Assembly (NCBI GenBank): GCA_002269645.1
Contig: NIVC01002956.1
Coordinates: 62,001 to 126,000 of the forward strand
Source: Macrostomum lignano
Taxonomy: Eukaryota
Length of the DNA stretch: 64,000 bases
Direction: 5' to 3'
Below the pieces are notes generated by a model, which worked only from the letters and a program-made list of their open reading frames with translations, searched no databases and was not told the origin of the DNA. This document shows positions 1 through 20,377 of this stretch, piece after piece (within the stretch, counting starts at the first letter, position 1; every line of letters starts with the position of its first letter). The position numbers and the translations under genes are program-made.

Positions 1-507
1 AGCAACAACAGCAACAACTCGGTCGTGTGGTACCCCTTGACCGATGCGGAAATCGATGCGGCCTTCGAAGCTGCCTATGCAGCTGAAGATGCCGACCTGA
101 TGGCGACTGCAGCCGATCTTGCCGCCACCGAATCAAACCAGCCAACGGCTAACGATGACGAAGAAGACGTCTTCTTCGACGCGGAACTTCTGGCTGCCTG
201 CAGCGCTGCTGAGGCGGCTGCTACGGCGGCGCCGGAAGTGCTACCTGTCGTGCTCGCGCCAGCGACCCAGGCCGAATCGAACGCAGCCGCGGACGATGAA
301 TGCGTCATCACGAAGGTGTCAAACGTCGTGGTGCCTTCCAGCAGTGATGAAGATGACTCGTTCAACGAAGGAAGCTCGGTCGCGGCTACTATCAAGCTGG
401 AACTCTTCGCCGACGAGGAGGCCTTCACCAGTGCCCCGACAGCGCTGCAGCCGAAGCGTCAACGGCTGGAGTCCGCTGCTGCTAACCCATCGGTTGTGCC
501 GATGTAG
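1..507 (+). CDS. 3' end of an acidic low-complexity ORF (open from the window edge), basic NLS-like PKRQRL near the C-terminus; function unknown
   Basis: Frame open from base 1 to TAG at 505-507; D/E/A-rich; abuts the (GGC)n run that precedes the YR domain. Confidence 0.4.
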   Translation, partial: SNNSNNSVVWYPLTDAEIDAAFEAAYAAEDADLMATAADLAATESNQPTANDDEEDVFFDAELLAACSAAEAAATAAPEVLPVVLAPATQAESNAAADDECVITKVSNVVVPSSSDEDDSFNEGSSVAATIKLELFADEEAFTSAPTALQPKRQRLESAAANPSVVPM

Positions 508-509
508 CG

Positions 510-1534
510 GCGGCGGCGGCAGCAGCGGCGGCGGCGGCGGCGGCGGCGGCGGTGACGGCGACGAGTCTGGCGATATCGAGGTTGACGAAGATGACGAAGA
601 CGATGACGAAACTGTCGCGGCGCTGAGCGGCAGCGGCGGTGTCCGCCTTAACGCTGAGGAGGTCCAGCTGCGCAATCGGTTTGCGCTGCATGCCACGGTA
701 CAACATCCTCTGCGCATCCAGCCATGGTGCGGCCTTCGCCTGGCCTATTTGGAGCCAAACAGCATCTATAGGCGGGACAATGATAGGCTTTGCCACAAGA
801 AACGCCAGTCTGTCGGTTGCAGCGTGCTCTGTCTGCCAACTTCTTTTGTCGAGATGCTCCGCAAGTGGCGTCGAGGCGCGAGCTTCGGCAACTGCGCCTA
901 TGATGACGAGGTCTTTGTATTTTGCACCCGCAATGGCACGCGTATGTCTCCGTCGACATTCAGCCACGCTGTGGAATCCGGAGTAGCTGGCATCCTACAT
1001 CGGGAAGGCGTCGGGCCAACTGTGTTCCGCAGCTCGACGCAGGACGTCGTCATGGCGAACAACCCTGATCTAATACAGCAGATGGCGGCGCTGTATGAGA
1101 CTTCGACAACCATGATTATGCGACACTACGCACCGAACGCTGTGCTCGCCAGTCGTACAGAAATGCAGGTCACCGTCAGCGGAATGATTGAGCAGCGGGC
1201 AGCATCAACGTCCCAGAAGCAGCAGCAGCAGCAGCAGCGGGAGCTGATCGCCGCTCGGGTCTCGCAGGAGCTGCCGACTCAGCAGCGGCAGCAGCCAATG
1301 TCGCAGAAGCGGCAGCAACAGCAGCGGCATTCGGAGGTGGTTGCAGTGCCGCAACTCGCGTCGAAACGGCGGGCTGCTGTGGACGCCACGCGCTCCTTGT
1401 TGCTGTCCAGTGCAGCGGCGGCGGCTGCGGCGGAGTTCGACTGGTCCGATGCGGCGGCGGCGACGTCCGGCTGCAAAGCCAGACGCAACGGCAGTAAGAA
1501 ACCTAAATTGTGCCGCGTGTCGGCCTCTGTCTAA
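510..1534 (+). CDS. Tyrosine recombinase-like catalytic domain (YR copy 1; Crypton/PLV-type), N-terminal half apparently missing
   Basis: Motif order HPLRIQPW (box I Arg) ... HKK ... VFVFCTRNGTRMS ... GPTVFRSS (box II x-x-x-R) ... LYETSTTMIMRHY (nucleophile Tyr); a paralogue is present at 14312-19535. Confidence 0.7.
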
Positions 1535-1884
1535 TAAGCGACTTTTTGCGACAGGCATGTGTCTGACCTTTGGAAGCCGTCTCCTTTTATGTATGTGTCG
1601 TTGCTGTTTCTCTCCCTATGTTTCATTGCACGCTCGATGTGACACTGTGGTGGTTGCACTACGCGTGGTGCAGGTTGTGTTTGCTCCCTCTTTGTCTAGA
1701 TAGTTGGCTATTTATTTTGTTGTAACATCCGCGTTCAGCATCATATACCCCTACGCCTATTATCCACACAGGCTATCAGCTATTGACTGATTGTATAGCT
1801 ACAATCTATTGGCCATAAATAGCTGCCAGTCCCCGATTCTTGCTGTTTTTACGCTCTATAGCTAGTGTGTACTTAATTACCACA

Positions 1885-1942
1885 GGCAGATTTGAAATTG
1901 CTGCTTGGCACCTCCGGTGCCAAGCACAATTTCTTATCTGCC
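1885..1942. repeat. Hairpin: ~26-bp imperfect inverted repeat with 5-nt loop (ctccg), built from the shared GTGCCAAGCACAATTTC motif
   Basis: aggcagatttgaaattgctgcttggcac (1885-1911) pairs with gtgccaagcacaatttcttatctgcct (from 1917). Confidence 0.85.
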
Positions 1943-2070
1943 TCGCCTCACCTCAGCCGCCTACTAATTCTAGTTATAGTACACTGTAGTAGTTGTAGTG
2001 TGCACCTACTTTTGTTCTTTTAACACTCTAGTAGCAATAGTAGCTGTAGTGCTAGCACAATCACGGCAAG

Positions 2071-2183
2071 GTGCCTAACACAATTCCCCTAAATTAATAG
2101 CCGGTGAGTAGTGCTGTCTGTCAGACAATACAGTTGTGCTGCGCTTAGCTACGCGTATATTTAACGGGAATTGTGCTGGGCAC
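2071..2183. repeat. Second inverted pair of the same motif
   Basis: gtgcctaacacaattccc (2071-2088) vs gggaattgtgctgggcac (2166-2183); 16/18 complementary. Confidence 0.8.
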
Positions 2184-2425
2184 TGTGCCGCGATTGTGCT
2201 ATCTCCCATCCCATTGTGTGCTTCTGTTATCTGCTCTAATTGAATGTCTATATTTATATATACAACGTTTACATTGTTATATTAGCTACTGTGTCATATG
2301 TCTCGCTCGCTTTTTTTATTATAGCAGCCACATTATGCAATGCAATAATCTTATAGTCTATAGTGTTTCTATACAGTCTTTTATAGCGTGCCCGCATATA
2401 CTCACCGCATCCCGCGATTACACGG

Positions 2426-2538
2426 CTGCCCGCTTTGCCTCCTTTTTCCGGATACAATGTACAGTCTACGACTGCCCAAATATACACTGTGTATGCCCGA
2501 ATTTACAACAGCGGGGCAAGTTTATTGACAAATTTTTT
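2426..2538. repeat. Conserved right-end block of YR unit 1
   Basis: ctgcccgct...tacactgtgtatgcccgaatttaca...gacaaatttttt is homologous to 20242-20377 (direct) and to 14125-14218 (inverted, 24/25 in the core). Confidence 0.75.
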
Positions 2539-2539
2539 C

Positions 2540-5268
2540 TATTCTTATTTTTTCTTAGAATTTTTTCTTGTAATGCTCACACCCATTCCCGCCGGGAAAA
2601 GTTTCTAAAGTACCACAGAGTTTCTACATAGACTTCACTTATACTTATTGACTGCCTGCGCGTAGAGTTTGCACAGAGATTTTCTGTTTCAAGCAAATAT
2701 ACATACATAGATTCAGACGCCAGTTTCGACTCTGATACTTCGTCGAGTCAGTATTCCACCGCTGATGAAACTTTCGAATGGTCTGAGGACGATGAGATGG
2801 ACATCGCTGAGAACAACGAGCAAGCCGGTGGGTGGCACATGGTTCAACCGAATGAGGACAACAGGCCATCAGCCCTACCCGATTTTCTCGGAACACCTGG
2901 CATCCGACCAGACTGGCAGCCTCCACCAACTGCTGATGGAAACGAAATGCTTTCCTAAAGCTTTTTTTTCAGACCAGTTGTTCGAAGACCTCAGCAATTG
3001 GACTAATGCTAAGGCTTGGAGAATTTTCAAGAAGCCGAAACAGAGGCTGCACTGCCGAAGCAAGTGTTGAAATGGCGGGACTCAACGACGGATGAAGTTC
3101 GTTAGTTGGAATCGTGCTTTTGATGGGTGTCGACAAGAAGCCGGAAATCGCCAACTACTGGTCAACCGATCCAGCGTTTCATTGCTCCCTTCTGGCCAAG
3201 CCATTCTCGCTCTCAAGAGACCGCTTCAAGCAGCTGCTGTCCTGCCTGCGTTTTTACAACTGCGCTGAGGCTTTAGGAGATGGCCCTCTGGCAAAGATGG
3301 AGCCCTTTCTGCACAGCGTAAAGCATCTGTGCAGCAACAATTACATGCCACGGCAGTGACTGTCGGTTGATGAGACACTCGTTTTGTACAAGGGCAGAGT
3401 TGCTTTTAAACAGTACATTCCAACAAAGAAAAGTAAATACGGAATTAAAATGTATTGTATCTGTGAGAGTGAGAGTGCGTACTTATGGAACTTCGTCGTC
3501 CACACATTCCCTGAGGTCAATAATCAGTTCGGTGAAGGCCTCGGGTGTCAGGACTTGACGATGAGTGAGAAGGTTGTTGCAGAACTGTGCCGCAGTTTGC
3601 TTAATCTTGGACACCACGTCTTGACCGACAGTTGGTTTAAGTCTCAGCGGCTGGCTACTTGGCTGTTGCAGCATGATACGCTGCTAACCGGAACAGTACG
3701 GAAAAACCGCGGTATCCCAGCTGAACTGCAAGCTGCCAACCTACATCCGAGTTCATCTGCATTCGCTCGCTCAGGGAACCTACTGGCTTGCAAATTTGTC
3801 GACAGGAAGCAGAGCGGCATAAAAACTGTGTATCTGCTAGATACAGCAGGAAAAGCTTATTGCATCCAGGTCCATCGTACCCGTCGTGGAGGTGCCGTGC
3901 AGGTGGTGCCGAAGCCTGTAAGTGTGTTAGCATACTGTGCCAGCATGGGTGGTGTTGACCATCTGGACGCTTCAATGCACCCTTACCTAGCCAATCGTAA
4001 GAGCATGCGCTGGTTCCACAAGCTTGGGTTCCACCTTTTCCTGATGCTTGTGAGAAATGCCTGGGTCATCTTCAAGCAATCGGGCGGCACAAAGACCTTC
4101 TTGCAGTTTATAAGGCTCGCAGTCAAATATCTGTTGGAGGACACTGGTGTTGCCAGGCGACGCGGTCGAATGCCAGATGGAGCAGCTGCCGGTGCTGTAG
4201 CAATGGAGCTGCTGCTCATTCTCCAAGCAAAGCTCCCAGACACAGGGACCAGGCTCGGCCACGCAAACGATGCCGAGTATGCTATGCGGCTGGCCAAGTG
4301 AAGAAGACAGTGTTTGTATGCGAAGCTTGCCCGGGAACGCCAGCACTCTGCCTTGGTGCTTGCTTCATGCAATTTCAAACCAATTAGGTCTGACGCCTGG
4401 CGATGTGTATTAGACAGTATAGAAAATATTGTAGTATCCACCCTTTCCGCAAATTTGCCTTTCTATTTTGACTTCATTTTGAATTGGTGCCACCACAGCC
4501 CCTGGTTACAGATAGTCCAGAAATTGTCCTGGTTACAGAAACTACTAATATGAGACGTAGGAATCAGAAAACAGTAGAAGAGGGTAGGGTCATGAGCACA
4601 GGGGTAGAGGTGAGGGAATTACAATAGGAAGGGGCGGATTCGCACAGTGATAACCGCAGGCGCAGAGACGGGGGAGGCAGGGGGTGTTAGAGATGGCGAG
4701 GATTCGCAATCAATCCAGGGACCCGGTCTCTCAGCTCCTAGACCTCAGTCCTAGCACCAAGGCCCCTTGAAATAAAATAATATATTTGTTGCATTATCGT
4801 GGATAGAAATTACATTATTCCGTATTAATTTGGAGTTATAATAAATTTAGATGCTTGTTGTTTTGTATTACCTGTTTCTTTCCAGTTTTCTAAAAGTTTT
4901 CTAAAATCAACTCTACAGAAAATGACGTGACAGCGTGACAATTGTGACAGCTTCCCTCCATTTTTGACCACTCCAGTTAAAAAAATGACCCCACTTCACT
5001 ATGTTCTAATATAATTTAAGTCGTTAACTTTTAAACAAAGAAAAATATATGAGTAATTGAAATTACTTTGTTTTGTTACAGTCTATCTTTTCTAAGTGCG
5101 TTTTCACTATCTTATTGGCCACTACTTGACCCGATTTCGGGCCACATCAGTCCAGAACGGGTGTGCTAATTTTGCTGGTTTTTTGGCCATAGATATAAAA
5201 AAATTCCCCGTTGGCTTTGGGTGTTGAGCCATGACCCGAATTTGGGCCATCCGTCAGCTCATGGTTAA
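2540..5268 (+). mobile_element. piggyBac-family DNA transposon, defective; right end ...TGG|TTAA at 5264-5268, left TIR not found
   Basis: Contains the transposase remnant; subterminal palindromic repeats gacccgatttcggg (~5129) and gacccgaatttggg (~5233); TTAA at 5265-5268. The left boundary is approximate. Confidence 0.65.
2710..4387 (+). pseudogene. piggyBac transposase pseudogene (stops and frameshifts)
   Basis: SRDRFKQLL, SVDETLVLYKG, KYGIK, TDSWF, GTVRKNR, MGGVDHLD; the C-terminal Cys-rich domain RCRVC...VCEAC...LCLGACF is in another frame, ending at TAG 4385-4387; in-frame TGA at 3357-3359. Confidence 0.92.
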
Positions 5269-5311
5269 TGGGATAGCGCATTTCATATTAGGGACTATAA
5301 CTAGTCTTTAG

Positions 5312-5365: not shown

Positions 5366-5493
5366 AGTTTATAGGTTAATGTATATAAACTTAAGCTTCC
5401 CCCTTCTAGTAGAAGCAGAGCAGCAGTCTTTATGGTTAGATCGCAGAAGAATAGCGCATCGTCTCACACAGTTCCAGCAGCAGCATCGTGAGC

Positions 5494-7945
5494 ATGTTCG
5501 ACGACGACGACGACGAGATAATGTTAAGTGTGGAAGAGCAGCTCGAGCTCGAAGAACAAGTTGCTGCTGAAGAGCGGCAGGCGGAGCAACTGCAGATGGA
5601 AGCTGCCGCTGCTGTTGCTACTTGTCATGAGGAGGAGTTGGAAGCTGCCGCTGCTGTTGCTACTTGTCATGAGAAGGAGTTGGAAACTGCCGCTGCTGTT
5701 ACTACTTTTCATGAGGAGCAGCAACCCAGTCGCCGGCGGATGCTATTAGAAGATGTCAGCACGCCGCAGACGAGCAGCGCAACGCCCTCTCGGCGCATCA
5801 TAGCCAATGAGACGCCGGAACCAAGCCAGCAGCGCGGCTTGCTTAACAAGCTGCCGCGATTAATTGTCTACAGCAGCGGTAGCGACGACGAACAGCAGCA
5901 GCATCCTGCTGACCACGTCGCCGGCTGCGGCGACCAGCCGCCGACTCTGCAGTTTATTCCGAAGGCGTCGCCCTCATTCCATACTACTGACTCTGCTGCC
6001 GCTGCTGCTCAAGCGTCACCGAAGCCGCACCTTCTACGGCAGCCTAGGATCGGCCCGTGCGGCATCGGCGCGCCCTGGCGCTTCACCACTCGCCCTGCTG
6101 CTCCTACTGCTGCCTTCCGATTCATGACGCCGACAGCCTCACCGAGACCTCGGTCGAGCCGCCCGCCGACGACGTTCTACCCGAGAGGTAGGTTACGTGC
6201 ATTTCGCGCTCACACTTTTGCTCATGCTACATTCTCTCATATTACAGTAGTATCATTTTCACATTGTTGTTTCCCGACGACACAGGAGCCACCGCCGCAG
6301 CCGTACCGCAGTCGAGTGCTACGCAGCGCGAGCGGGCTTTGGCCTCTGGCTACGAGCTGGCGGCCAGGGAGATGGAGGCGACAGCTAAATATAACCTCGC
6401 AGAGACGACCTGCCCGGCCGGCGAGATCCCACTGTTCCACGAAGAGGGGGAGGAACGGCAGCAGCAGCCGGCTAGCACCTCGCCGAAGGGAACGAGCTCG
6501 CGCCTTCTGGCATCGTCCGTGTCGCTGCATCCCAGCGACACCATACCAAACGACATAATGTTTTCGGCTAATGCGAGCCGGCGTTCGCATCGTGCAATGT
6601 CGGTGATTCAGCTGTACTACGTCAAGAACGCGCCCCAGATGAAGCTGATGATCAACGGCACCTGGAGCGGCGACTTCGCGACACAGTTTGCCATAGGTGA
6701 GTGAGTGAGTGTTTGCGTCGTTTCACAAGTGTCTGAAAAACTCATAACAATTATCTTCTACGTAGAACATGCGATTTTAAGAAACTCTTTAACCCATCCC
6801 CCAACGCCACCACAACAAACAACAACTACTACTACTGTATGTAATAAGGCCTGGCAGATAACGAATTTATGCTGACTCCCGCGCACATGACTGACGCGTA
6901 CGCCCCGACTCCATCTTGCCCTGTGGACAAGACACGATCGCTGTTGATATTTTTGCGATCCAATGCCATGCACAATTCCTTCTTCGCGTCTGGCTCCAGC
7001 CTGCACACCTTTGCGGTGCAGGGATGGACATGCGCCGAGATCAGGAGCGTGCGCTCAGCAGCTGCCGAAATATGACGGGTGACCATGCACGACCCCACAG
7101 CCGCCATCACCGAAATCGACGACGCTTGTCTGTCCCGCGTTGTCCAACTGTACAGATGGGCTATGTCATATCCGCTGGGGAGTATGGCACCGCGACCAGA
7201 CGACCCCCATCTCGTCTGCGGTAATCCACTGCTTTTGAAGCAGACCATGGATTACTTTACAACGGTGCAACAGATGCGCAGAATTCGTGCCGAAGAGCAC
7301 GGCGTGTCACTGCTCCCCAGCACCATTGTCTGGCCGAGTATGTGCGGGGCATGTCACCCTCTGCCTGTACAATGCATGCAGGTGCCTCCACGCGGCGACA
7401 CAGCCGCTTCAAATACGGATCAGCCGGGGTGCAGCAATGTGGCAACACACCGCATCGCGCTAGGTGGAAGCTGCGCGATTCAGCAGGCAATCTGCACAGC
7501 GATGCGGCAGACTGTAGTTGTGCCCTCAATCCTGTACCTATGGGGTGCCAGTGGAGTGGGCAAATCAGCAATGGTGGGCCTGCATTTTGGTCGTGAGACC
7601 GTATTCACTCCGAACCTTGACGAGGGTTTTGCCTTCGACGGTCTGCGCCTGGGCATTCATAGGTGTCTGTTCTTTGATGAGCTAAGCGTCTCGCAGGCCT
7701 CCTCGCAGCAGCTGCTTCTGCTGCTCAATCGCGATAAATTTACCATCAACGCCAAGCACAAGGCCCTCATTCTGACTGAATGGAGCGGCCCGGTGATGCT
7801 CGCTGGCCATGTCCCTCCCGCCGATCTGCCCATAGACTTTGTCAGGCGGGTCAACTCCGGCGGCCAGTGTATTCACGTGAAGCACGACATATTCCGGTGC
7901 ACCGGCTGCCAGCTGCAGGATGATGCTCGCGCAGAGTCTGATTAG
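5494..7945 (+). pseudogene. Three-exon gene encoding an acidic N-terminus plus a CRESS-virus Rep-like SF3 helicase; one in-frame TGA (7073-7075). Exons 5494-6187, 6286-6696, 6849-7945
   Basis: Walker A LYLWGASGVGKS, AFDG, Walker B CLFFDE, B' LLLLLNRDKFTINAKHK, motif-C-like WSGPVMLAGHVPP, Arg finger FVRRV; two phase-1 GT-AG introns (gtaggt at 6188, gtgagt at 6697) join three ORFs in frame. Confidence 0.75.
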
Positions 7946-8346
7946 AGCTTGATTAGCTGGATTGATGAACAACGGGGCAGATAAACGATGACGCACTGCT
8001 TTCCCTGCCCTTAAATATTCCCAAATCCCGATTCCCCTCCTAGCAATCAAGCCGGCCTTATATGCATTAGTAGTGGATTTTGTTGTTGTTGCTAGGCTGC
8101 TCACATAGTGCAGGATGCGCCGTAGAACGCAGGTAAACACAAAGCTAGGTAATATTACTCGTGCGTCAGCAACGCAACAAAGTTCACATTTGGCCGTTCA
8201 AGTTCCAACAATTTCGTGTTACAGCTATTATACGAGCCACTGCAGGGACAGTAAAAATTCAACTATTCTGCAGCTTTATGTGCACCTTTTGCTGCTTTAG
8301 CAGGCGCGAGCATTAGAGCCTTAACGCTACTGTAACTAAGGATAAA

Positions 8347-8445
8347 GTGCCAGACAAAACATCGGAAAAGTGCTACATTCATTTTCATACATTTCCGTAA
8401 GGCGTGTTGGCACAGTAGCACTATCGCGAAATTGTGCTTAGCAAC
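8347..8445. repeat. Inverted pair of the shared ~30-bp motif downstream of the Rep-like gene
   Basis: gtgccagacaaaacatcggaaaagtgctac (8347-8376) and gtagcactatcgcgaaattgtgcttagcaac (8415-8445); each about 23/30 identical to copies at 19990 and 19851. Confidence 0.75.
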
Positions 8446-9226: not shown

Positions 9227-9273
9227 ATGTTCAGCTTTCTGCGCCTCCTCTTTGGCGACGACGCCGCAGCTGA

Positions 9274-9317
<44 letters not shown>

Positions 9318-12300
9318 CGAAGATAAGCTGGGCGATGCGGGCGATCTGCTCTTCGCACGAGCGTCCTTTGCGGAAACCGGCTTGGACTTTGCTGAGAGTG
9401 CCCTTGGATTCCAGCAGGAAGTTCAGCCTTTGGTGCACCAGCCGTTCCGCGACCTTGGCAATGCAGCTGGTGAGGGCGACAGGGCGATACGAACCCGGGT
9501 CGTCAGCCGGTTTGCCGCGTTTCGGGATCGGAATGATAATCGCCCTGCGCCACTGGTGGGGGCAGTGTCCGCTGAGCCAGGCCTTGTTGATCAGGTCAAG
9601 TAGTCGCTGCTCGGTCCGTTCGGGGAGACGCTTGAGCATCTCGTTGGACACTCCGTCCGGGCCGGGGCTCTTCCTGGATTTCAGCGACCTCAGGGCCTGC
9701 TTAAGTTCCACGGCGGAGAAGGCGCCACAGATCTGTTGTTTGTGGTCGGGCTCGCAGCAGCGCGCTTTGATGGCGGCATAGGCGCATCTGTTGACCCCGC
9801 GGTCCGACCTCCTGCGCTCCACGCGAGACACGTCCGCGTACAGGGTGCAGAAGGCATCCGCTTTCTCCTTGTCCGTGACCGCAGTCCTCTGCCGGCGGTA
9901 TCTGGTCTCATCGGCCGGGATGGCAAGGGCCGCGTTGGGGGGAGGCGGCGGGGGTTCGCCCCTCATCGCCCGGGCCAGACCGAAAAGGTCGCTGTTGACG
10001 GACAACTCCGCGACTCGTTCGTCCCAGAAGCGGAGCTTCTCGGCCTTGATCGGGCTGGAAGAGACTCCCGCGCTTAGAGCGATCCTCTGTTTACTCGACT
10101 TCAGCAGAGCCTACGACAAGGTGTGGCGGAAGTCTCTGATCTGCAAGCTCGAGAAGCTGGGAGTCCCCGCCTGCGTCCTGCGCTGGATCAACAGCTTTCT
10201 CAGCGACAGGAGAGCGCGCGTCCGATTCGGCAATAGCCTCAGCAGAGAGCGCATCTTCCGGGAAGGCCTGCCCCAAGGCTCGGTGATCGCCCCTCTGCTT
10301 TGGCTGGTCTACGTCAACGACCTGCCAACTGCCATCGCGGAAGCATCGCCGGAAGCCGAGATCAGTCTGTATGCCGACGACTCGGCCATCCTGGCGCGCC
10401 ATACGGACCTCGAAAGCTGCGGGCACATCGTGCAACCGGCTCTGGACTCCGTGGCCCGCTGGTGCGACCAGAACAAGGTCGTGCTCAGCACCGGGAAGTG
10501 CAGTTACAGCACTTTCACGCTGAGCCCCAACGAGAACCGCGGCAAGACCAGAGTCGAACTCAACATCGGCGGCAGCGAGCTTCGTTTCGAGCCCAACCCG
10601 GTCTTCCTCGGCGTCAAATTCGACGACCACCTCGGGTTCGCGGAGCACGCCAATGATACCCGCCGCCGCATGGCTGCCAGAAGACGCCCACTGCAGGCCA
10701 TCGCACACCGGCAAACGGGTGCGACGCAGAGCATCCTCCGCACCGTTTACGTTGCCACTATCCGAGCTGTGGCGGACTACGGCAGCGGCGTATGGCTCGC
10801 GGGAGCGGCACCGAGCACCAGGCTCCTAGTCGAGCGCCAGCAGAACGCATGCGCGCGCCTGATTACTGGCTGCATATCCACGGCCCGCACTGAAAATCTC
10901 CTTAGCATCGCCGAGCTGCCGCCCCTCAGCCACGTGGCCATCGAACGCGCGTGCACGCTGAGGGAGCGGATGGCTCGCCTCCCGGACGGATCGCCATCGC
11001 AGAGCATCGCGACAGCGGTCAACACCCCGCGCCTCAAAAATCGCGCCTTCGAAGCCGCCAACCGGCCGAACCAGGCCGAGGGGGTCAATCAGCGCCTCCC
11101 GGACAGGGACCTTGACGTCCGACGTCGCTTCCGCGGCTGCTGGAGGCGCGCGGCGCGGGAGCTAGAATGTTGCGAGGTACTGGACAGGACGCCCCGGGCC
11201 CACCGACCCCTTGGCCCCCCACCGTGGGAAGTGGCCGAGGCCGGCCGCGTCCAGTTCGATGTCTCGCTCAGCAAGGTTATCAGCCGCGACATGCCGGCGG
11301 CCATGAAAGCCAACATAGCCAGGCAAATCGTCGGCCCACTGGAGACCTCCGGACACGTCATCTGGACGGACGGATCCGCGGCTGGCGGTTTCACGAACGG
11401 AGGCGGTGCGGCGATCGCCCAGTGGCTTCCGGACAACGACGCCCGCCTCGTCGCGGCTGGCGCGCTCTGCAGCAGCTTTACCACAGAACTCTGCGCCATC
11501 AGGGAGGCCTTAGACATCGCCTACCACCCGGCGCCGCCCACGGGCGCTATAACTATCGCCACGGACAGCCTCAGCGCCATCCAGGCGCTCAGCGCCGGAC
11601 CCCTGTGCCAGCAAAACTCAGTTGCCGCGGACTGCTGGAGTAAACTCCTCAACCTGATCGCCATGGACCGCCCTGTTCACTTCGCTTGGGTGCCATCCCA
11701 CTGCGGGGTCGCCGGCAACGAGGCGGCCGACCGCGCCGCCGCCAACGCGGCCGGGCTCGACCAACAGGCGGTGCCGATCGAGCTTGACGCGGCAAGGGCA
11801 GCCGCTCGTCGCTCTCGCAGAAAGCTGGACGCCAGAATCCTGCCGCCGAGACTGCAGCCGCCGACGAGCCTCCCTAGACGTCTCCAGGTCCTGGTCAACC
11901 AGCTCCGGTCCGGCGCCAGCACCATCAACTTTAGCACCAGACACCGCCTGGGCTTGGAACAGTCCCCCGCCTGCCCCGATTGCGGCGCGGAGGACTCGGC
12001 TGAACATCTGCTCCTCCACTGCCCCCGCGGTGACCACTTCCGGAGAAGAAGCGGCCTGGCCCCGAGCGACCTGATGGGGTCCCCGGAGGCCATCGTCAGA
12101 CTATTACGCAGCATGGGGCGGCTCCCCTCGGGGTCCACGCCCCCCTCCAGATCGGCCTAGCCGGAACGGAGGCGCCCCGAAGAAGAAGAAGAAGAAGAAG
12201 AAGAAGCAGCAGCATCCACCAGCGAGCACGAGTCTGAAGCAGCTGCTCCACCAATCGCCGCCGCCGCTGAACAGGTATATTCGGCTAGTTTCTGTTGGCC

Positions 12301-12885
12301 ACCAATACCAGCTGCTGGCGTGCCTTGTAGCCAGCGTAACAGCCCGCTGATTTCGCCGCCGAACAGGTCGGCGGTAATAATGATTCCAACAACAGGTGAG
12401 CACGCCTTTGCCTGGAAATAATTGTGCGTGCGTGCGTGTGCGGGACAATTTTATATTCGTGCGCTCTTTCCACGTATCAGAACCTATATATATTGTTTCC
12501 TCGTCTAATAAACTCAACAATAGGCAAAACAGCAGTGCCTGCTGCTACGGATGCTGCCTCCTCGGCTACAGCTGCTGCAGGTGCATCCGCCGCCAGCGCC
12601 GATGCCAGCAACAGCAGCAGCAGCAGCAAGAAGCGAGTGTGTCCTGCAGATGGATGTTCCGTTATCATGCGAATGGATGCACTTAAACGCCACTTTACGG
12701 CGAAGCATGCTGCCTGGTGCCTGGCTCGCCCCGTGAGCGCCAATGTAAAGGACACGGCTGCCGGCTGGTCTACAAAGCAGCGCGTGGACTGGCACTGGCG
12801 CAGCCTGATCCTTAGAAGTGAGCAGACCATCAGCTCGAAGAAGCATGCAAGAACCGAAACGTATTGCGAGCAATGCGCGTTGTAG
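9227..12885 (+). pseudogene. Small two-exon C2H2 zinc-finger gene disrupted by a LINE in its poly-Ala (CAG) tract. Exon 1: 9227-9316 + 12206-12395; exon 2: 12524-12885
   Basis: ATG 9227 MFSFLRLLFGDDAAADP(A)n resumes after the LINE as AAASTSEHESE...; phase-1 GT(12396)-AG(12523) intron; CPADGCSVIMRMDALKRHFTAKH zinc finger. Confidence 0.65.
9317..12205 (+). mobile_element. Non-LTR retrotransposon (I-group, RT + RNase H + CCHC), 5'-truncated with a twin-priming inversion: 9317-10050 inverted, 10051-12205 forward, (GAA)n tail
   Basis: Minus strand has KSPGPDG, YRPVALTS, QAGFRKGRS...QLIF; plus strand continues GLEETPALRAILCLLDFSRAYDKV, GLPQGS, YADD, RNase H WTDGS/TDS/WVPSHCG, CPDC..EDSAEHLLLHC; tail at 12179-12205; CAG runs on both flanks. 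Confidence 0.93.
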
Positions 12886-14124: not shown

Positions 14125-14236
14125 TGTAAATTCGGGCATACACTGTGTACCTGCGGGCTGCCATAGACGCATATTGACTCGGAATCGGGATAAGGAGCAG
14201 TCGTGTATTAGCGGGCAGTTGTGTATTAGCGAGCAG
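14125..14236. repeat. Left inverted end block upstream of YR copy 2
   Basis: tgtaaattcgggcatacactgtgta (14125-14149) is the reverse complement of 2483-2507 (24/25); gtgtattagcgggcag (14203-14218) is the reverse complement of 20242-20257 (15/16), with a second tandem copy at 14221. Confidence 0.8.
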
Positions 14237-14311: not shown

Positions 14312-15282
14312 ATGGAATCCGCCGCCGCCGCAGCCAAAGCAACACCAGCGTCTGCCGACCCGCCGCCAAACGAGGCGTCCGCCATCTCCGCCGCCACTGG
14401 CATCGACGCTGCCACCGCTGCTGCCGAAAAGAAGAAACGCGGCTCCCTGTCCGCGCCATTCAGACCCGATTCGCCAGCCGTGCTGCAGCTAAGAGTGCTG
14501 AGATCGCTATACTACGACCCTTCGACAGGTGTTCACGATCAAAACATCGACGGCTTTGAGGAGAAGTGGAAAGCAATCGCCGACCTGGTACTATCAAGCT
14601 TTGAGAAGATGGCGAAAGTACCATATTCGGCCTCCACAGCCGTGGACGGTGAAAATTACGACTGCAGCGATGACCAAGATGCCGCAGCGACTCTTCCGCC
14701 GCCGCCGCCGCCGCCGCCGCCGCAGCCAATAGCTGAGGCTTCTGCATGCTCGGAGTCGCCGACTACTCAGCCGCAGCCTCCAAGAGACTTTCTATTCTGT
14801 CTGGCTGACCCAAATGCCGCCGCAGACGCTCTACGCCAGACTAGTAGCAGCATCGGCACGGTCGCTGATTAAATGTATGCGCTTTATTATTCTCTACATC
14901 GAAGACGATCCCGGGCATCGCCTGCTGGTTATTCGGCGTCTTCGCCTACCAGCCGATATCGCCGACAATCTGGAGGAGCGCTGTTTGCTATTTAAAAAGC
15001 GCCTGCGAGTGCTCCGGATGCAACACGACTTTTATCGTAAGCTTGACGCCCCTGAACACCACGCGAAAAAGCAGAAAAAGCTGCTGACCAGCGAAGAATG
15101 GCGCCTCGTGCTTGCCGACTACAGCAAGCTCGTAGAGCAATTCGGTTACGGCGGTAGCAGTTCTCGTGCTCGACTACTGGGGAGCGCCGCAGACCAAGTC
15201 GTTAGGGCTGCTGCAGACGAAATTGGCGATGCCGCCGCCGCCGCCGCCGCCGCCGCAGCCGACGATGACGCAAATGCTTCAG

Positions 15283-15316
<34 letters not shown>

Positions 15317-18300
15317 TAGCGGTAACACCAGCGCAGACGACGGCGAGGACACCGACGACGATGCTTTGTCCGCGTCGCAGCAGTCGATGATCCAGCTGCG
15401 CAATAGATTTGCTCTCCACGCCACTGTGCATCATCCGATACCAACACTAGAGGAGAGGAGCTTCTGGCCCTCATCTCTAACACAAACCTCATGCTCTGCA
15501 ACCGCGGCAGCACTCCTACCTTTAATAATGGCAGATGGACCGAGGTCCTCGACGCCACACTCGTTACCCCAAGACTCTTTGACAGAGTTGAGGAGTGGAG
15601 AGTCTGGTCTGAGGAGCCCTCCCTGTCTGACCACTGCTTTATCGCCTTTAACATCGCGGATACTAAAACCCAGTCTCCGATCACTTGGAGACGCAATATC
15701 CGCAACACTGATTGGGCGGCCTACAAGGCTGCCCTTGATCTGCACCTGCAGGAACTCACGGACTTACGTCCGATTGAGACCTGCGAGGATGTGGATCATA
15801 TGGCTGAGACGCTGACAGGTTGCATTATTGCAGCCTACGAAGCGGCTTGTCCTGCTCGCGCCTACAAAGGCAAGACCTCGGCGCCGTGGTGGAACCCGGA
15901 CCTGGGGAAACTCAGGCGGAAGGCCAAAAGCCTTCATCGCCGTGTCATGAAGACCGGAAACCCGGAGGACATGGAGCTTTTCCGGCAAGCCTCCCGCAAT
16001 TTCAAATCTGAAGTGCGCAAGGCCAAGGAATGTAAGTGGCGCCAATTCTGCAATGAATTGGATCAAGACAGACCTACTTCTAGGCTTGTCAAGGCCCTTA
16101 CAATGGACAAAATGTCCAAATTAGCCATGATAAAAAAGATGATGGCTCTCTTACTAAAGACCCTGAAGAAGTGCTTCAGCATATGCTTAGCACATTCTTC
16201 CCGAGGGTACCTACTGCTAGACCGGAGTCCAACCATTCGATGGATGGAGCCACCCTAGCGGCGGGCATTGTCACTGAAGACCTAATCGCTCGTGCGGTCA
16301 GAACCTTCAAACCCTTCAAATCTCCTGGACCTGATGGTATCTACCCTGTTCTCCTTCGTGAAGCAGCCAAGATACCCTCGTTCCTGAGACTCACCCGCAA
16401 TCTTATGCGGGCCTCTATCCAGCTGGGATACGTTCCCAAATGCTGGACTGAAGCTCGGGTAGTCTTTATTCCCAAACCTGGGAAGGGTGACTACCAAAGC
16501 GTCAAGGCCTTCCGGCCTATTAGCTTAACGTCAGCAATGCTTAAGCTCACTGAGAGGCTTATTCTCTGGCGGCTGCTCTCCTGCGAGCTGACAGCGATGC
16601 CCCTCAGCAATAATCAGCACGCCTTCCGTACCGGGAGGTCGACTGACAGCGCCCTGCATGCGATTGTCGAGAAGATTGAACGGGCGGTACTGGGTGACGG
16701 TTACGCCCTGGCTCTCTTTCTTGACATTGTTGGCGCCTTCGACAACGTTATCTTTGAAGCGTTTCAGAGGCCCTTCAAAATCGCAAAGCTCATGCTACCC
16801 TCATACGGTGGATCATGTACATGATCTCCAACCGTACGGTCACTGCCCAACTTCTTGGGCAAACTGCCTCCACAGAGTCTGTAAGGGTGGACCCCAAGGC
16901 GGAGTCCTCACCCCGACGCTCTGGAACCTGGTCATGGACGCTCTTCTGAGTGACTCCCGACCCGACCCCGTCTTCAAAGTCGGGTATGCTGATGACGTCA
17001 CGGCCATTGTGGCAGGACCGTCTCCCAGCACGCTCAGGGATCTGATGCAGAGCTTTATCCGCAAAGCAGAATCCTGGGCCAATGACAATGGTCTGGAACT
17101 CTCTGAGCCCAAAACCGTTGCCATTATGTTTACCAGCAGACTACGCTGGAACATACGTCCTCTGCAGCTCTACGGCAGAGATATTGCCTTCGCGCACCAG
17201 ACCAGATGTCTCGGGGTCACACTTGACCACCGGCTCAACTGGTCCTACCACGTGAAAGCAAAAGCCAAGCGTGCCTCAGCCATCCTGGCCCAGCTCCGAC
17301 GAGCACTTGGCACTTCTTGGGGTCTATCCCCAAAGCGGCTTTGGTGGATCTATACTTCCGTAGTTAGACCTGCCATTACGTACGCCTCGGTTGTCTGGGT
17401 TAGCGCTACCCAGGTCAAAAGCCATGCAGACCTGCTCAACACGATCCAAGGCAGAGCGTGTAGGCTCATCTGCAACGCCACCAGGTCCACGCCCTTTGCT
17501 GGCATGGGGGCCTTCCTTAATCTACCGCCTCTTGACCTCTTCGTCAGGGGTGAGGCGGCTAGAACGACGCGGCGTCTAATTGATGCCGGCGTCAAATTCA
17601 TTTACATGAGAGCACCTGCTAAGCGGAACCTTGTCCCGCATAGCGACCTGAGCCTCAACTTTCTCAACGAGTGTCAGGCCAATCGCGTCTTCACCGATCG
17701 CATTGCCTCAACGCTCAACCTGAGACAGCGCTACTCCGTAGCTATCGACTCGCGCGATAACATCAATGACCAATGGAACCTTGGTGAGCTTCATTGTTAC
17801 ACCGACGGTTCTAAGCAGTCAGCCAACACCGGCTTTGGTGTTGGAATCTTTCTGAACGGGAAGGTCATCGCTACCCACGCTCAATACACTGGGGTCAACT
17901 CCAGTGATTTTCAAAATGAAGTTCTGGCCATCAGCTCCTGCACTGCAGAGCTTCTCGCCACTGGCGTTACTGGTAAGAACATCATTTTCCATTCGGACAG
18001 CCAAGCCGCCTTGCACGCCATCAGTGGCTGCAGTACCAACTCTGCAACAGTCCTCGACTGTATCAAACTCCTCAACGTGTTGGGTTCCACCAACAAAATT
18101 ACCCTTAAGTGGGTTCCGGGGCATGTGGGGATCCGAGGAAATGAGTTGGCTGACACCCTTGCAAAAGTTGGTGCCTCCGGCTCCTCTCTCGGTCCCGAAC
18201 CCCTTGTCCCGATTCCTGGCTGTGTCATCGACTCGCGCATCAAAGCGTGGATCAGGACCCAGCACCGCTCGACTTGGGCGAACTGCACTACCTGCAGGCA

Positions 18301-19535
18301 ATCCAGAGGCGCTGTCCCTCAGCCCTCTCACCAGCTCCGGAAGCTCCTCTTGCGCCTCTCGCGCAGAGACATCCGGGCTGCCACCATGAACCTCTCTGGT
18401 CACGGCTGCTTCTCCAGGCACCAGCACCTGCAGGGCAACGCCACCAACGCCACCTGTAGTTTCTGCAACTCAGGTGACGAAACCGCTGAGCATTTCGTCA
18501 GCATCTGTCCCGCCTTCACGCGGGCCAGACTCACTTACCTCGGGCCACACACATCTATTACTGAAGCGTGCAAACCCGAAAACTTTAATCAGCTCATGCG
18601 CTACCTTCGGGCCACCCGCAGGGCTGAACTCTCCTTTCCAGAGAGCACTATAGCTGCTGGCGACACTGGGGGACCTCCCTGGGCGGCGCCAACCCTCCGT
18701 CCATAGCGACGCGTCGGCTGTTCAGGGACTAGCGGAATGGGCGCCCGCGCCTTCCCGCTGTGTCCCCTCCGGGACAGCCCTGCAGCTGCAGCGTCCTCTG
18801 CCTGCCGACGTCCTTTGTTAACCTGCTGCTCAAGTGGCGACACAGCGCGGGCTTCGGCGCCAGCCCAGATGGCGGCGACGTTTTTGTGTTTTGCACACGA
18901 AACGGAACCAAAATGTCGTTCCGTTGCAGTGTTGGGTCGCCACGGCGTCGGTCCAAACGTGTTCCGCAGCTCAACACAGGACGTTGTCATGTCCAACAAC
19001 CCGGACCTAATAAATTAGATGGCGTCACTGTATGAGACATCGCCGGCAATGATCATGCGGCACTACGCGTCGAACGCTCTGTTGGCATCTCGCTCCGACA
19101 TGCAAGCCGTCGTCCAGGGTATGATTGAGCAGCGGGCCTCAACATCGGTAGCATCGCTGCGGCGCCAGCGGCTGTGGACGAGGCGCCGCCGAATGCTGCT
19201 GAACCTTGGCAGCAGCAAAGCCGGGAAAGACGGCAGCGAAAAATAGCGCCGGCAGTGGTGGCGACGGCGGCGCTTACAGCCCATCGCAGCCGATTACGTC
19301 AACAGAGCGACAGCTCCAGGAGGCCACTAAACGAAAGGCGCTAGTGATGCCGCCGCAACTCACATCTAAACGGAAAGCTGCGGCCAACGCGACGTGCACC
19401 TTGATGCGACTGGACGACAACGACTATGATGACGCGGCGGAGAGCAGCATGGCGGCTACTGCAGCGACGTCTGACGTCAGAGTCAGATGCAGCGGCCGTA
19501 AGAGAGTTAAATTGTGCACGCCAGCTTCTGTTTGA
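14312..19535 (+). pseudogene. Tyrosine recombinase-like gene (YR copy 2) with N-terminal region, split by a LINE, frameshifted
   Basis: QLRNRFALHATVHHPI | LINE | CSVLCLPTSFVNLLLKWR...VFVFCTRNGTKMS; GPNVFRSSTQDVVMSNNPDL*MASLYETSPAMIMRHY; C-terminal PQLTSKRKAA...KLCTPASV aligns with copy 1; frameshifts near 14870 and 18920, TAG at 19016-19018. Confidence 0.8.
15441..18786 (+). mobile_element. Non-LTR retrotransposon (APE-RT-RNaseH-CCHC, LOA/I-group-like), 5'-truncated inside the endonuclease, two frameshifts; 3' boundary uncertain
   Basis: NTRGEELL..NRGSTPTF..LSDH; KSPGPDG, FRPISLTS, QHAFRTGRST, LDIVGAFD, PQGGVLTPTLW, YADD, YTDGSK, SDSQAAL, KWVPGHVGIRGNELAD, CSFCNSGDETAEHFVSIC. Confidence 0.92.
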
Positions 19536-19748
19536 GACATAGCTACTTTGTGCATGTAGCGGCATAGGGAACTGTTTATATATTAGCTCTATATGCCATA
19601 TAGATACTAGCTACTTTTGATTGAGTACCTACTAATCAGTCCGCAGCGCGACCCCTTCGCTAGCCTGTAAGCCAAATGTTAACGAACTAAAATACTAGCA
19701 TTGGTGTATTATAGCACTCAGATATGAAAAGAAATAGCTGACTCGAAA

Positions 19749-20020
19749 GTGCCAAGCACAATTTCGAGTGCTTGCTTGCTAGCAATTATTCCATCTATGT
19801 ATTACATTAAATTGCGTGTACGAGTTACTTGTGCTTATTCATGTACATAGGTAGCACTATTTCGGAATTGTTCTAGGCACATTTCCTATTAAATTATATT
19901 AATTGGAATGAAAACTCTGCAATTGTTTCTATGATATGGCTGGCTGCTGCCGCCGCCGCCGCCGTCCGTGTTTTATCTTTTAGGGAGAAGTGCCTAACAT
20001 AATTTCGAAATAGTGCTACC
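19749..20020. repeat. Three copies (forward, reverse, forward) of the shared motif downstream of YR copy 2
   Basis: gtgccaagcacaatttcg (19749), gtagcactatttcggaattgttctaggcac (19851-19880), gtgcctaacataatttcgaaatagtgctacc (19990-20020). Confidence 0.85.
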
Positions 20021-20237
20021 TGTGTCAATCATATTTATATATATTTATTATTAATGTTTCCGCTTCGCTTGTTCAAGTATATAAAATGGTTTCATTATCT
20101 ACTAGCTAACCAATCGTTGTTTTATCTGTTGTTGTTTGCTGCATCCCTATTTTTACAATTTACTATTCTTTAGGATTAATGTCAGAAGCTAAACAGGCCA
20201 GTATATTTATCTTACCCTCTCTATACACCTTTATATA

Positions 20238-20377
20238 TACACTGCCCGCTTATACACACTGTTTATTGTTTTTAATGAACATCATAAAGTTAGGCCAGTA
20301 CAGTTGCCTAACTCCGCAAATACACTGTGTCTGTCCGATTATACACGGCTTTAACAAGTGTATAGACAATTTTTTTG
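20238..20377. repeat. Conserved right-end block of YR unit 2
   Basis: tacagt...caaatacactgtgtctgtccgattatacac...acaagtgtatagacaattttttt aligns with 2460-2538; similarity stops at the T-run. Confidence 0.75.

What the first reader, a model, noticed from the sequence alone, without database searches (positions are those of the whole stretch)
1..20377. Candidate new animal mobile-element system: tyrosine recombinase + CRESS-Rep-like helicase + zinc finger, linked by shared cis motifs
Seen: all non-parasite genes are co-oriented (YR1, Rep-like SF3 gene, C2H2 gene, YR2). The same ~30-bp motif occurs downstream of YR1, the Rep-like gene and YR2, and homologous end blocks sit at 2426-2538 and 20238-20377. 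Removing the nested piggyBac and two LINEs from 2539-20377 leaves ~8.9 kb: Rep-like + ZnF + promoter-like + YR. Known: Cryptons use a YR alone, Helitrons pair a HUH endonuclease with a PIF1/SF1 helicase, and CRESS viruses lack integrases; I know no animal element combining a YR with a CRESS-type SF3 helicase. Inference: a circular, YR-integrating replicon in tandem copies, or a family of autonomous YR units plus cargo units sharing recognition sites.
Basis: partly seen in the sequence, partly recalled or inferred. Interest (0 to 1): 0.9.

Follow-up and report, generated by a model that had tools for sequence, protein, structure and literature searches.

The report
Recombinase transposons beside a virus-derived gene
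In an animal (flatworm-like) genome, two old copies of a previously undescribed tyrosine-recombinase transposon flank a gene captured long ago from a small circular DNA virus; the same two genes are also neighbours in the flatworm Macrostomum lignano, so they may be linked, but they do not form the single self-replicating element first proposed.

Summary
YR1 and YR2 are real, diverged coding copies (dN/dS 0.30). Their core gives weak, sole hits to tyrosine-recombinase models in three libraries. The "Rep-like" gene is a three-exon, 732-codon gene with one in-frame TGA. Its C-terminal half has an SF3 helicase fold, and its nearest nuclease-competent relatives are Rep proteins on 2.1-2.9 kb Rep+capsid-like contigs, two of them apparently circular. 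The shared motif and the end blocks are far above chance.

The mobile unit is therefore a roughly 3-kb YR-only element with inverted ends (14125-20377), and the Rep-like and zinc-finger genes lie outside it.
- The Rep-like protein has lost all three HUH nuclease motifs and the helicase motif C asparagine.
- It shares an intron position and phase with its single M. lignano homologue.
- No homologue of the zinc-finger gene was found at the M. lignano locus.

One result favours a link. In the only related locus with long flanks (M. lignano), a YR-like ORF lies 4.2 kb from the Rep-like homologue.

Verdict: a new Crypton-like variant plus a Rep gene of viral origin (probably co-opted), possibly linked. 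The circular replicon is unsupported.

The parts
1..1534 (+). YR1 gene, 3' part. The window starts inside it, and the frame changes near 505 within a GGC repeat. The ORF is intact across the catalytic core (650-1198), and the C-terminal tail ends KLCRVSASV*.
   Evidence: The core alone hits Pfam PF00589 (E 0.008, residues 5-159 against profile 20-167 of 172), PHROG integrase phrog_1 (E 0.01) and NCBIfam XerC (E 0.05). Each is the only hit in its library.
1535..2410 (+). YR1 3' internal region with motif copies: the palindrome 1884-1943, GTGCC..CACAATT at 1917(+), 2071(+) and 2169(-), and an 8-6-8 site at 2179-2200.
2411..2538 (+). Right end block of the YR1 element. It holds a CCCGC..TACAC subterminal repeat (2411 onward), then the 26-mer ATACACTGTGTATGCCCGAATTTACA (2482-2507) with an ATACAC-T-GTGTAT core, then about 30 nt shared only with the YR2 right end.
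   Evidence: Alignment A1. Smith-Waterman against shuffles gives z 9.6 and 9.8..
2539..5290 (+). piggyBac remnant with decayed transposase ORFs at about 2700-4301. Its ends are not defined: no TTAA+CCC left terminus was found.
   Evidence: Pfam DDE_Tnp_1_7, E 4e-34. Terminus search.
5494..7945 (+). Rep-like gene: exon 1 5494-6187, exon 2 6289-6696, exon 3 6849-7945, with both introns in phase 1. It has 732 codons and one in-frame TGA at 7073-7075, which aligns with Arg in the relative on L005. Walker A is at 7544-7567 and Walker B at 7670-7681.
   Evidence: AF2 model pLDDT 78. Foldseek finds SF3 helicases and CRESS Reps. Exhaustive HMMER gave 15 hits.
8272..8464 (.). Module in the Rep-like 3' flank that is homologous to the YR 3' regions. 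8407-8464 matches the reverse complement of 19972-20028, 19851-19921, and the reverse complement of 2160-2208. The match of 8272-8359 to 1991-2083 is borderline. It contains the perfect palindrome AGCACTAT-CGCGAA-ATTGTGCT at 8417-8438.
9227..12885 (+). Small gene with one C2H2-like pattern (exon 3 at 12523-12885). Exon 1 is split by a 5'-inverted LINE at about 9258-12210. This is an inferred gene model, and the gene is not part of the YR unit.
   Evidence: No homologue was found in L001. No Pfam family.
14125..14236 (-). Left end block of the YR2 element, which is an inverted copy of the right end blocks. The 26-mer is at 14125-14150, and two 17-mers (ACTGCCCGCTAATACAC-like) are at 14203-14236.
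   Evidence: I1; z 9.8 against 2411-2507; z 6.2 against 20235-20261.
14312..19535 (+). YR2 pseudogene: N-terminal part 14312-15440, a nested LINE at about 15441-18720, then 18787-19535 with frameshifts, an in-frame stop (19016-19018) and an internal deletion that removes the Lys-bearing hairpin.
19536..20234 (+). YR2 3' internal region: motif at 19749(+), an inverted pair at 19845-19886 / 19984-20025, and 8-6-8 sites at 19853-19874 and 19996-20017.
   Evidence: (I5).
20235..20377 (+). Right end block of the YR2 element: 17-mer at 20241-20257, 26-mer at 20320-20345, and an extension to 20377.

Best explanation
Two kinds of thing lie side by side.

(1) A lineage-specific, Crypton-like DNA transposon.
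- It is about 3 kb without nested insertions and carries one gene for a divergent tyrosine recombinase. The inferred active-site residues are R-K-T-R-(Y/E)-Y, with both canonical His positions replaced.
- It is bounded by structured inverted ends of about 110 bp: two subterminal 17-mers plus a terminal 26-mer with an ATACAC-T-GTGTAT core.
- Its 3' part carries several copies of a palindromic 8-6-8 site.
- YR2 (14125-20377) is a complete but dead copy. YR1 is a second, diverged copy whose left part lies outside the window.
- Inferred mechanism: the recombinase binds the terminal 26-mers and/or the internal palindromes, and excises and re-integrates the unit by strand exchange, as proposed for Cryptons.

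(2) Between the two copies, a gene descended from the Rep of a small circular ssDNA (CRESS-type) virus.
- It has acquired introns and a long low-complexity N-terminus.
- It has lost the HUH nuclease motifs and the sensor-1 Asn but kept Walker A and B.
- It is therefore at most an NTP-binding, possibly DNA-binding, protein and not a replication initiator. In this window it carries one nonsense codon.

The link.
- The two genes are probably not neighbours by accident. The Rep-like 3' flank carries a solo copy of the transposon's internal palindromic module, and a YR-like ORF sits 4.2 kb from the Rep-like homologue in M. lignano.
- The most likely link is historical or through targeting: either an ancestral YR element carried or captured the Rep-derived gene, or YR elements home to the palindromic site next to it.
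- The Rep-like and zinc-finger genes are not inside today's mobile unit.

Shown: homologies, boundaries, motif statistics, protein fold, loss of motifs. Inferred: recombinase activity, mobility, the role of the motifs, and the nature of the link.
For: YR family:
- dN/dS 0.30 between the copies.
- Sole hits to tyrosine-recombinase models in three libraries.
- Homologue in M. lignano L001:14944-16647(-), E 4e-7, two colinear blocks. The best of 100,000 shuffles scored 12.8 bits against 25.7 observed.

Boundaries:
- Inverted end block at 14125-14236.
- No end block after the Rep-like gene.

Rep-like gene:
- HMMER hits to a flatworm/metagenome family and to HUH+S3H Reps.
- AF2 pLDDT 78.
- Foldseek top hits are E1, AAV Rep40, PCV2 Rep ATPase and CRESS Reps.
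- The alignment shows loss of motifs I-III and of motif C.
- Intron position and phase are conserved with M. lignano.
- Single-member cluster PAA62424.1.
- The relatives sit on 2.1-2.9 kb contigs with capsid-like ORF2 and no YR; two of the four (L014, L015) show terminal redundancy consistent with circles.

Shared module.
Against: - The recombinase assignment rests on sub-threshold profile hits (16 bits against a Pfam cut-off of 27).
- AF2 failed for the YR core (pLDDT 36).
- PDB profile searches and an hhalign comparison with lambda Int, P2 Int and Cre gave nothing.
- Both canonical His residues are replaced. The M. lignano homologue also lacks the first Arg, so the family may be non-catalytic.
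- Only one element has both ends in view. No second complete copy, target-site duplication or empty site could be examined, so mobility is unproven.
- Co-occurrence rests on one outside locus, and the copy number of YR-like genes in M. lignano is unknown.
- No significant shared non-coding motif was found in M. lignano.
Confidence: 0.5

Rival explanations
1. Unrelated neighbours. This is a transposon-rich stretch where YR elements, a piggyBac and LINEs have piled up around a host gene of viral origin. The shared module after the Rep-like gene is the leftover of a third, mostly deleted YR copy, and the M. lignano adjacency is coincidence.
For: - Nested piggyBac and LINEs are present.
- The module in the Rep flank is a fragment with no terminal block.
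- The Rep-like gene is single-copy with a conserved intron in M. lignano and sits among ordinary genes such as COG7 and EME1.
- Gene orientation differs between the two loci: co-directional here, convergent in L001.
- No motif is shared across species.
Against: - Within the 20.8-kb locus fetched around the only M. lignano Rep-like gene recovered, a member of a family found nowhere else in these searches lies 4.2 kb away.
- The Rep-flank palindrome is the most perfect copy in the window.
- Two copies plus a fragment lie within 20 kb.
Confidence: 0.27
2. One composite mobile system. Autonomous YR units mobilise, or co-integrate with, a unit that carries the Rep-like gene and uses the same recognition sites. 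In the stronger form, this is a circular replicon integrated in tandem.
For: - The genes are co-oriented, and the Rep-like gene starts soon after the YR1 right end once the piggyBac is removed.
- The 3' module with an 8-6-8 palindrome is shared.
- Rep-like and YR-like genes are neighbours in M. lignano.
- Precedents exist: bacterial Rep plasmids integrate site-specifically (PMC6668415), and a Rep-like gene sits inside a TIR transposon in Tuber (PMC3198968).
Against: - The inverted end block at 14125 closes the YR unit without the Rep-like gene.
- The Rep-like region has no end blocks.
- The nuclease motifs and sensor-1 are lost.
- The YR copies differ by dS 0.85, so they are not tandem units of one integration.
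- No ZnF homologue was found in L001.
- The Rep-like gene is low-copy in M. lignano.
Confidence: 0.15
3. A co-opted host gene pair. Both the YR-like and the Rep-like gene are old exaptations from one integrated element, as DUF3504 genes are from Cryptons, kept as neighbours for a host function. The 'ends' and palindromes are then regulatory DNA.
For: - Catalytic residues are degenerate in both proteins, and more so in M. lignano: R to S in the YR-like ORF; HUH and motif C lost in the Rep-like protein.
- Both are open ORFs in M. lignano.
- Purifying selection acts on the YR gene.
- Kojima and Jurka document repeated Crypton domestication (PMC3212892).
Against: - YR2 is a LINE-disrupted pseudogene and the Rep-like gene has a stop codon here.
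- Two diverged YR copies with inverted structured ends look like transposon copies.
- No Pfam DUF3504 hit.
Confidence: 0.08

Closest known systems
Crypton DNA transposons (tyrosine-recombinase-only elements; Goodwin 2003; Kojima and Jurka 2011, PMC3212892)
   Same: A single gene for a tyrosine-recombinase-like protein, no reverse transcriptase, a few kb long, present in animals. Extra genes and domesticated derivatives are known for Cryptons.
   Different: Cryptons are described as having neither TIRs nor long direct repeats, only 4-6 bp terminal direct repeats (PMC3212892). This element has structured inverted ends of about 110 bp and internal palindromic sites. The canonical R-H-R-Y tetrad reads R-T-R-Y here. 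No sequence similarity to any database protein was detectable.
DIRS1-type retrotransposons and ciliate Tec elements (YR elements with inverted terminal repeats; from my own knowledge)
   Same: They combine a tyrosine recombinase with inverted terminal repeats.
   Different: DIRS elements encode RT/RNase H and an internal complementary region. The only RT here belongs to a nested LINE. Tec elements are much larger, multi-gene and found in ciliates.
Rep of CRESS-DNA viruses (HUH nuclease + SF3 helicase) and endogenous Rep-like genes in eukaryotes (Liu et al. 2011, PMC3198968)
   Same: SF3 helicase fold with Walker A and B. The sequence links to HUH+S3H Reps on small Rep+capsid-like contigs, two apparently circular. 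Endogenised, conserved and expressed Rep-like genes are already known in many eukaryotes.
   Different: HUH motifs I-III and the motif C Asn are lost. The gene has introns and an N-terminal extension of about 350 residues. It is chromosomal, and no capsid remnant lies nearby.
Papillomavirus E1 / polyomavirus large T (inactivated HUH-fold origin-binding domain + SF3 helicase; PMC6668415)
   Same: The architecture matches: a nuclease-dead HUH-derived N-domain followed by an SF3 ATPase. E1 is the top structural match.
   Different: E1 and LT keep a complete helicase active site. Here sensor-1 is replaced (AGH/ANV/AAV/SSV). The N-domain was not modelled, and no origin function has been shown.
Site-specifically integrated bacterial Rep plasmids (pCRESS; PMC6668415) and the geminivirus-like Rep inside a TIR transposon in Tuber melanosporum (PMC3198968)
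   Same: These are precedents for a CRESS-type Rep travelling with an integration or transposition function.
   Different: They are bacterial, or use a DDE transposase in a fungus. Their Reps are intact or multi-copy. No animal example with a tyrosine recombinase turned up in the four literature searches run here.

Membership tests
Crypton | Encodes a tyrosine recombinase with the catalytic tetrad R-H-R-Y | tested here: inconclusive
   PF00589 E 0.008 (16.4 bits against a cut-off of 27.1), spanning nearly the whole profile. PHROG integrase E 0.01 and XerC E 0.05 are each the sole hit in their library. By manual alignment, R, K, the second R and Y are present, and both His positions are replaced (Thr; Tyr/Glu). 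AF2, PDB profile searches and hhalign gave no support.
Crypton | No reverse transcriptase or other transposase in the element | tested here: met
   Between the end blocks (14125-20377), the only other coding sequence is a nested LINE with endonuclease, RT and RNase H domains.
Crypton | No TIRs; short (4-6 bp) terminal direct repeats (PMC3212892) | tested here: not met
   Inverted end blocks of about 110 bp lie at 14125-14236 and 20235-20345, with z 6.2-9.8. Short direct repeats could not be assessed from one complete copy.
Crypton | Multiple dispersed copies and evidence of mobility | not testable with these tools
   The source genome is not in any searchable collection. Only two copies and one fragment are visible in the window.
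DIRS/Ngaro YR retrotransposons | RT/RNase H encoded together with the YR | tested here: not met
   The RT present is a LINE that interrupts the YR reading frame.
CRESS-DNA virus Rep | SF3 helicase domain with Walker A, Walker B and motif C | tested here: inconclusive
   The fold is confirmed: pLDDT about 90 in the domain, PCV2 Rep ATPase TM 0.64, and CRESS Reps top the viral library. Walker A and B are present, but the motif C Asn is replaced by AGH.
CRESS-DNA virus Rep | HUH nuclease motifs I (FTLN-like), II (HUH/HUQ) and III (YxxK) | tested here: not met
   Aligned with HUH-bearing relatives: FFxT becomes YYVK; HLH becomes SLL; the Tyr position aligns with Arg/Trp in the nearest relatives (L005, P0005) and with the TGA codon in the window.
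CRESS-DNA virus Rep | Encoded on a small circular genome with a capsid gene | tested here: not met
   The gene is chromosomal and spliced, with no ORF2/ORF3 remnant nearby. The relatives P0010, P0011, P0012 and P0015 do sit on 2.1-2.9 kb contigs, two of which show terminal redundancy.
Helitron / Replitron | Active HUH Rep (Y2 + Pif1-type SF1 helicase, or Y1 without helicase) | tested here: not met
   The helicase is SF3, not SF1, and the HUH motifs are absent.
DUF3504 (domesticated Crypton YR) | Match to Pfam DUF3504 | tested here: not met
   The Pfam scan of the core at E up to 10 lists only PF00589.

The most novel reading that the evidence does not exclude
An animal integrative element built from a tyrosine recombinase plus an E1/large-T-like initiator. 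The initiator would be a CRESS-virus Rep whose nuclease domain became a DNA-binding domain. The 8-6-8 palindromes would serve as shared origin or recombination sites. The element would be ancestral to macrostomid flatworms and would still be traceable as a linked YR/Rep-like gene pair in two genomes.
Probability: 0.12. Interest if true: 0.9.

Novelty: new variant of a known kind. Interest (0 to 1): 0.6.

Why it matters
If the YR unit is mobile, it widens the definition of Crypton-like transposons to forms with long structured inverted ends and a non-canonical active site, in a phylum where no such elements turned up in the searches run here.

The Rep-like family is a clear case of a viral replication protein being kept after losing every nuclease motif. 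This parallels the route proposed for papilloma- and polyomavirus initiators.

The repeated adjacency of the two genes gives a concrete, cheap test of whether a virus-derived ATPase and a recombinase travel or work together in animals. The test is a census of flatworm genomes.

Tried and rejected
- Word-indexed protein searches with the helicase ORF, the YR1 C-terminal part and a YR1/YR2 core alignment found nothing. The first YR search was probably swamped by poly-Q/poly-A words.
- Exact look-ups of window ORFs found nothing, so the source genome is not in the collection.
- Viral-contig scans for both proteins found nothing.
- AF2 on the YR core with a 2-copy alignment gave pLDDT 36 and was unusable.
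- PDB sequence and profile searches for the YR gave no hits.
- hhalign of the YR alignment against lambda Int, P2 Int and Cre gave probability 0.08. Both alignments are too shallow for this to be informative.
- tblastn of YR against L001 missed the homologue. Only the profile search with filters off found it. The reciprocal single-sequence phmmer also fails, so the match depends on the profile. Shuffle controls support it.
- BLASTP of the N-terminal parts of YR2 and the M. lignano ORF was not significant. Pfam on the M. lignano ORF gave nothing.
- A search for end blocks after the Rep-like gene found none.
- Searches for the motifs in related loci, and for cross-species non-coding similarity, were not significant.
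- piggyBac termini were not found.
- Rfam found no RNA family in the window.
- tblastx of YR1 upstream sequence against YR2 upstream sequence gave only low-complexity matches.
- Rejected ideas: DIRS-like retroelement (the RT is a nested LINE); Helitron or Replitron (wrong helicase class, no HUH); MITE insertion as the source of the motifs (the order of the motif copies is conserved between two copies that differ by dS 0.85).

Full report
CONTEXT
- The window is animal DNA. Outside the finding it holds a Forkhead gene, NHL and RING exons and an SLC52 riboflavin-transporter gene, separated by many minisatellites.
- None of the window's ORFs is in the 15-billion-protein collection. The source genome therefore could not be searched, and genome-wide tests were impossible.

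THE TWO YR GENES
- YR1 runs from the window start to 1534. YR2 is in two pieces (14312-15440 and 18787-19535), separated by a LINE. It also has frameshifts, a stop codon and a deletion.
- The copies align over the core and share a C-terminal tail (…KLCxxxASV*). DNA identity is only 69-77%.
- Over 187 aligned codons, dS is 0.85 and dN/dS is 0.30. This is a real protein-coding family whose copies diverged long ago under selection, not a recent tandem duplication.
- Whole-ORF Pfam scans found no integrase, and word-indexed searches found no relatives.
- The low-complexity-free core (650-1198) gives one hit per library, always a tyrosine recombinase:
  - Pfam PF00589, E 0.008, covering profile positions 20-167 of 172;
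  - PHROG integrase, E 0.01;
  - NCBIfam XerC, E 0.05.
- By manual alignment the motifs read HPLR…HKK…TVFR…YETS…RHY. That gives R, K, R and Y present, with both histidines replaced, in both copies.
- AF2 failed. PDB profile searches and an hhalign comparison gave nothing.
- I rate the tyrosine-recombinase fold as likely (about 0.8) and catalytic competence as open.

ELEMENT BOUNDARIES
- A third copy lies in inverted orientation at 14125-14236, 75 bp upstream of the YR2 start codon. It scores z 9.8 against 2411-2507 and z 6.2 against 20235-20261.
- All three copies have the same internal order: one or two 17-mers (ACTGCCCGCTWATACAC), about 50 nt, then a 26-mer with an ATACAC-T-GTGTAT core.
- The simplest reading is a YR-only element with inverted ends at 14125-20377, about 3 kb once the LINE is removed. 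The Rep-like and zinc-finger genes lie outside it.
- Cryptons are described as lacking TIRs (PMC3212892), so this is a variant and not a textbook Crypton.

THE REP-LIKE GENE
- Gene model: exons 5494-6187, 6289-6696 and 6849-7945, both introns in phase 1, 732 codons, one in-frame TGA at 7073-7075.
- An exhaustive HMMER search with the last 288 residues found 15 proteins, in two groups.
  - The closest group is P0001 of M. lignano (PAA62424.1, 39% identity) plus short metagenome and Logan contigs.
  - The second group is 370-440-residue proteins with an N-terminal HUH domain (Gemini_AL1, E 4e-5) and an SF3 helicase.
- With these sequences as the alignment, AF2 gave pLDDT 78, and about 90 in the ATPase domain.
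- Foldseek returns only SF3 helicases from the PDB: E1, AAV Rep40, B19 NS1, PCV2 Rep ATPase (TM 0.64) and a vientovirus Rep. CRESS Reps top the viral library. 'CRESS-Rep-like SF3' is therefore correct.
- The HUH-bearing relatives sit on 2.1-2.9 kb contigs. Two of these have 30-nt terminal redundancy. Three of the four (L004, L014, L015) share a detectably homologous ORF2-type (putative capsid) protein; the L013 ORF2 has an Arg-rich N-terminus. L013 and L014 share an ORF3. None encodes a YR. They look like ordinary small Rep+capsid replicons.
- Aligned against them, the window protein and its close relatives have lost motif I (FFxT to YYVK), the HUH motif (HLH to SLL/VAI/SGY) and the catalytic Tyr. 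They have also lost the motif C Asn (SN to AGH, ANV, AAV or SSV). Walker A and B are nearly invariant.
- The TGA aligns with Arg in the L005 relative. A single C-to-T change (CGA to TGA) would account for it.
- The intron after '…F(A/I)I-G' has the same position and phase in M. lignano.
- This is an endogenised viral Rep that has become a spliced, low-copy cellular-type gene. That kind is known (PMC3198968), although this family has not been described.

THE SHARED MOTIF
- The 15-mer occurs 8 times against 0.8 expected.
- The 8-mer AGCAC[AT]AT occurs 13 times in the window, 9 of them in the three 3' regions.
- The palindromic form AGCACWAT-N6-ATWGTGCT occurs 4 times against 0.08 expected. The perfect copy is behind the Rep-like gene.
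- Homology around it extends to about 57 nt for the Rep flank against YR2 (z about 8.4 to 8.8), and about 50 nt against YR1. A further borderline match of about 90 nt keeps the same order.
- The motif copies keep their order relative to the stop codon and the end block in YR1 and YR2, even though the rest of the 3' region is unalignable. They are constrained parts of the element.
- An 8-6-8 inverted site is the format expected for a tyrosine-recombinase core site (PMC3212892). It would equally suit any dimeric DNA-binding protein. This point is inference.
- No end block follows the Rep-like gene.

CO-OCCURRENCE ELSEWHERE
- Only one related locus has long flanks: M. lignano L001 (20.8 kb).
- tblastn found no YR there. 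A YR1/YR2 profile run without filters finds a 568-residue open frame on the opposite strand at L001:14944-16647, 4.2 kb beyond the Rep-like stop codon.
- The hit has E 4e-7 and two colinear blocks covering the core. A Ser-rich acidic linker sits just before the first block, as in YR1 and YR2.
- The best of 100,000 composition-matched shuffles scores 12.8 bits against 25.7 observed.
- The reciprocal single-sequence search fails, and Pfam sees nothing in this ORF. It lacks the first Arg.
- Apart from this gene pair, the two loci share nothing.
- No homologue of the zinc-finger gene was found there, and no shared non-coding motif.
- The other Rep-like contigs are too short to be informative.

VERDICT
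- The proposed unit (2539-20377) and the 'circular replicon' are not supported.
- The YR-only element with inverted ends is the best-supported mobile unit. The Rep-like gene is a nuclease-dead viral derivative.
- A non-random link between the two is plausible and testable. I put it at about even odds or slightly better.
- The zinc-finger gene is a bystander whose first exon is split by a 5'-inverted LINE.
- Novelty: a new variant of a known kind (a Crypton-like element with TIRs), plus a new member of a known kind (an endogenous Rep-derived gene).
- The most novel reading still open is a YR plus E1/LT-like integrative element in animals. I give it about 0.12.

Noticed in passing
window 9205-12210: The LINE is 5'-inverted. 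The first part of the RT domain is on the minus strand (9205-10005) and the rest, with RNase H, is on the plus strand (9791-12160). This looks like twin priming. The LINE ends in a (GAA)n tail and splits exon 1 of the small zinc-finger gene.
   Followed up: partly
window 8287-8400 and 9124-9226: A block of about 110 nt is duplicated at 88-92% identity. The first copy directly precedes the palindromic module, and the second directly precedes the ATG of the zinc-finger gene. Its meaning is unknown.
   Followed up: partly
window 20375-21121: An ORF with a GHGKGAADGVG motif and a PHD finger (Pfam E 6e-4) starts exactly where the YR2 right end block stops. It may be a truncated gene of another mobile element or the insertion target.
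   Followed up: no
window 14862-15200: The N-terminal part of YR2 gives a weak Chromo_2 hit (E 0.003, below the cut-off). A chromodomain-like targeting module would be of interest for a transposon.
   Followed up: no
L004, L013, L014, L015 (Logan contigs, 2.1-2.9 kb): These are small replicons, two of them with 30-nt terminal redundancy. They encode an HUH+SF3 Rep. Three of the four (L004, L014, L015) share a homologous ORF2-type protein, presumably a capsid; the L013 ORF2 has an Arg-rich N-terminus. L013 and L014 share a third ORF. None of the ORFs has a Pfam match. This is an apparently uncharacterised CRESS-like virus group and the closest nuclease-competent relatives of the flatworm gene family.
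   Followed up: partly
L005:1501-2862 (JGI metagenome 3300040801): An intronless, uninterrupted full-length ORF of the nuclease-dead Rep-like family (34% identity to the window by tblastn) lies on an environmental contig. The family therefore exists outside the two flatworm-like genomes.
   Followed up: partly
L001:11201-11922 (M. lignano): A 722-bp element with perfect 48-nt terminal inverted repeats encloses a Tc1/mariner-type HTH remnant. It lies between the Rep-like and YR-like genes, and a purine-rich microsatellite of about 1.5 kb follows at 12888-14430.
   Followed up: no
window 24483-25277, 27625-28124, 33233-33838, 38694-39233, 39547-40385, 42090-47136, 47521-48803, 56301-57192: Dense minisatellite arrays lie between and inside host genes (Forkhead 26919-27515, NHL 35690-36262, SLC52 55737-56417). 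One is a 5-kb array with 32-nt steps that leaves a 1,700-codon open frame by chance.
   Followed up: no
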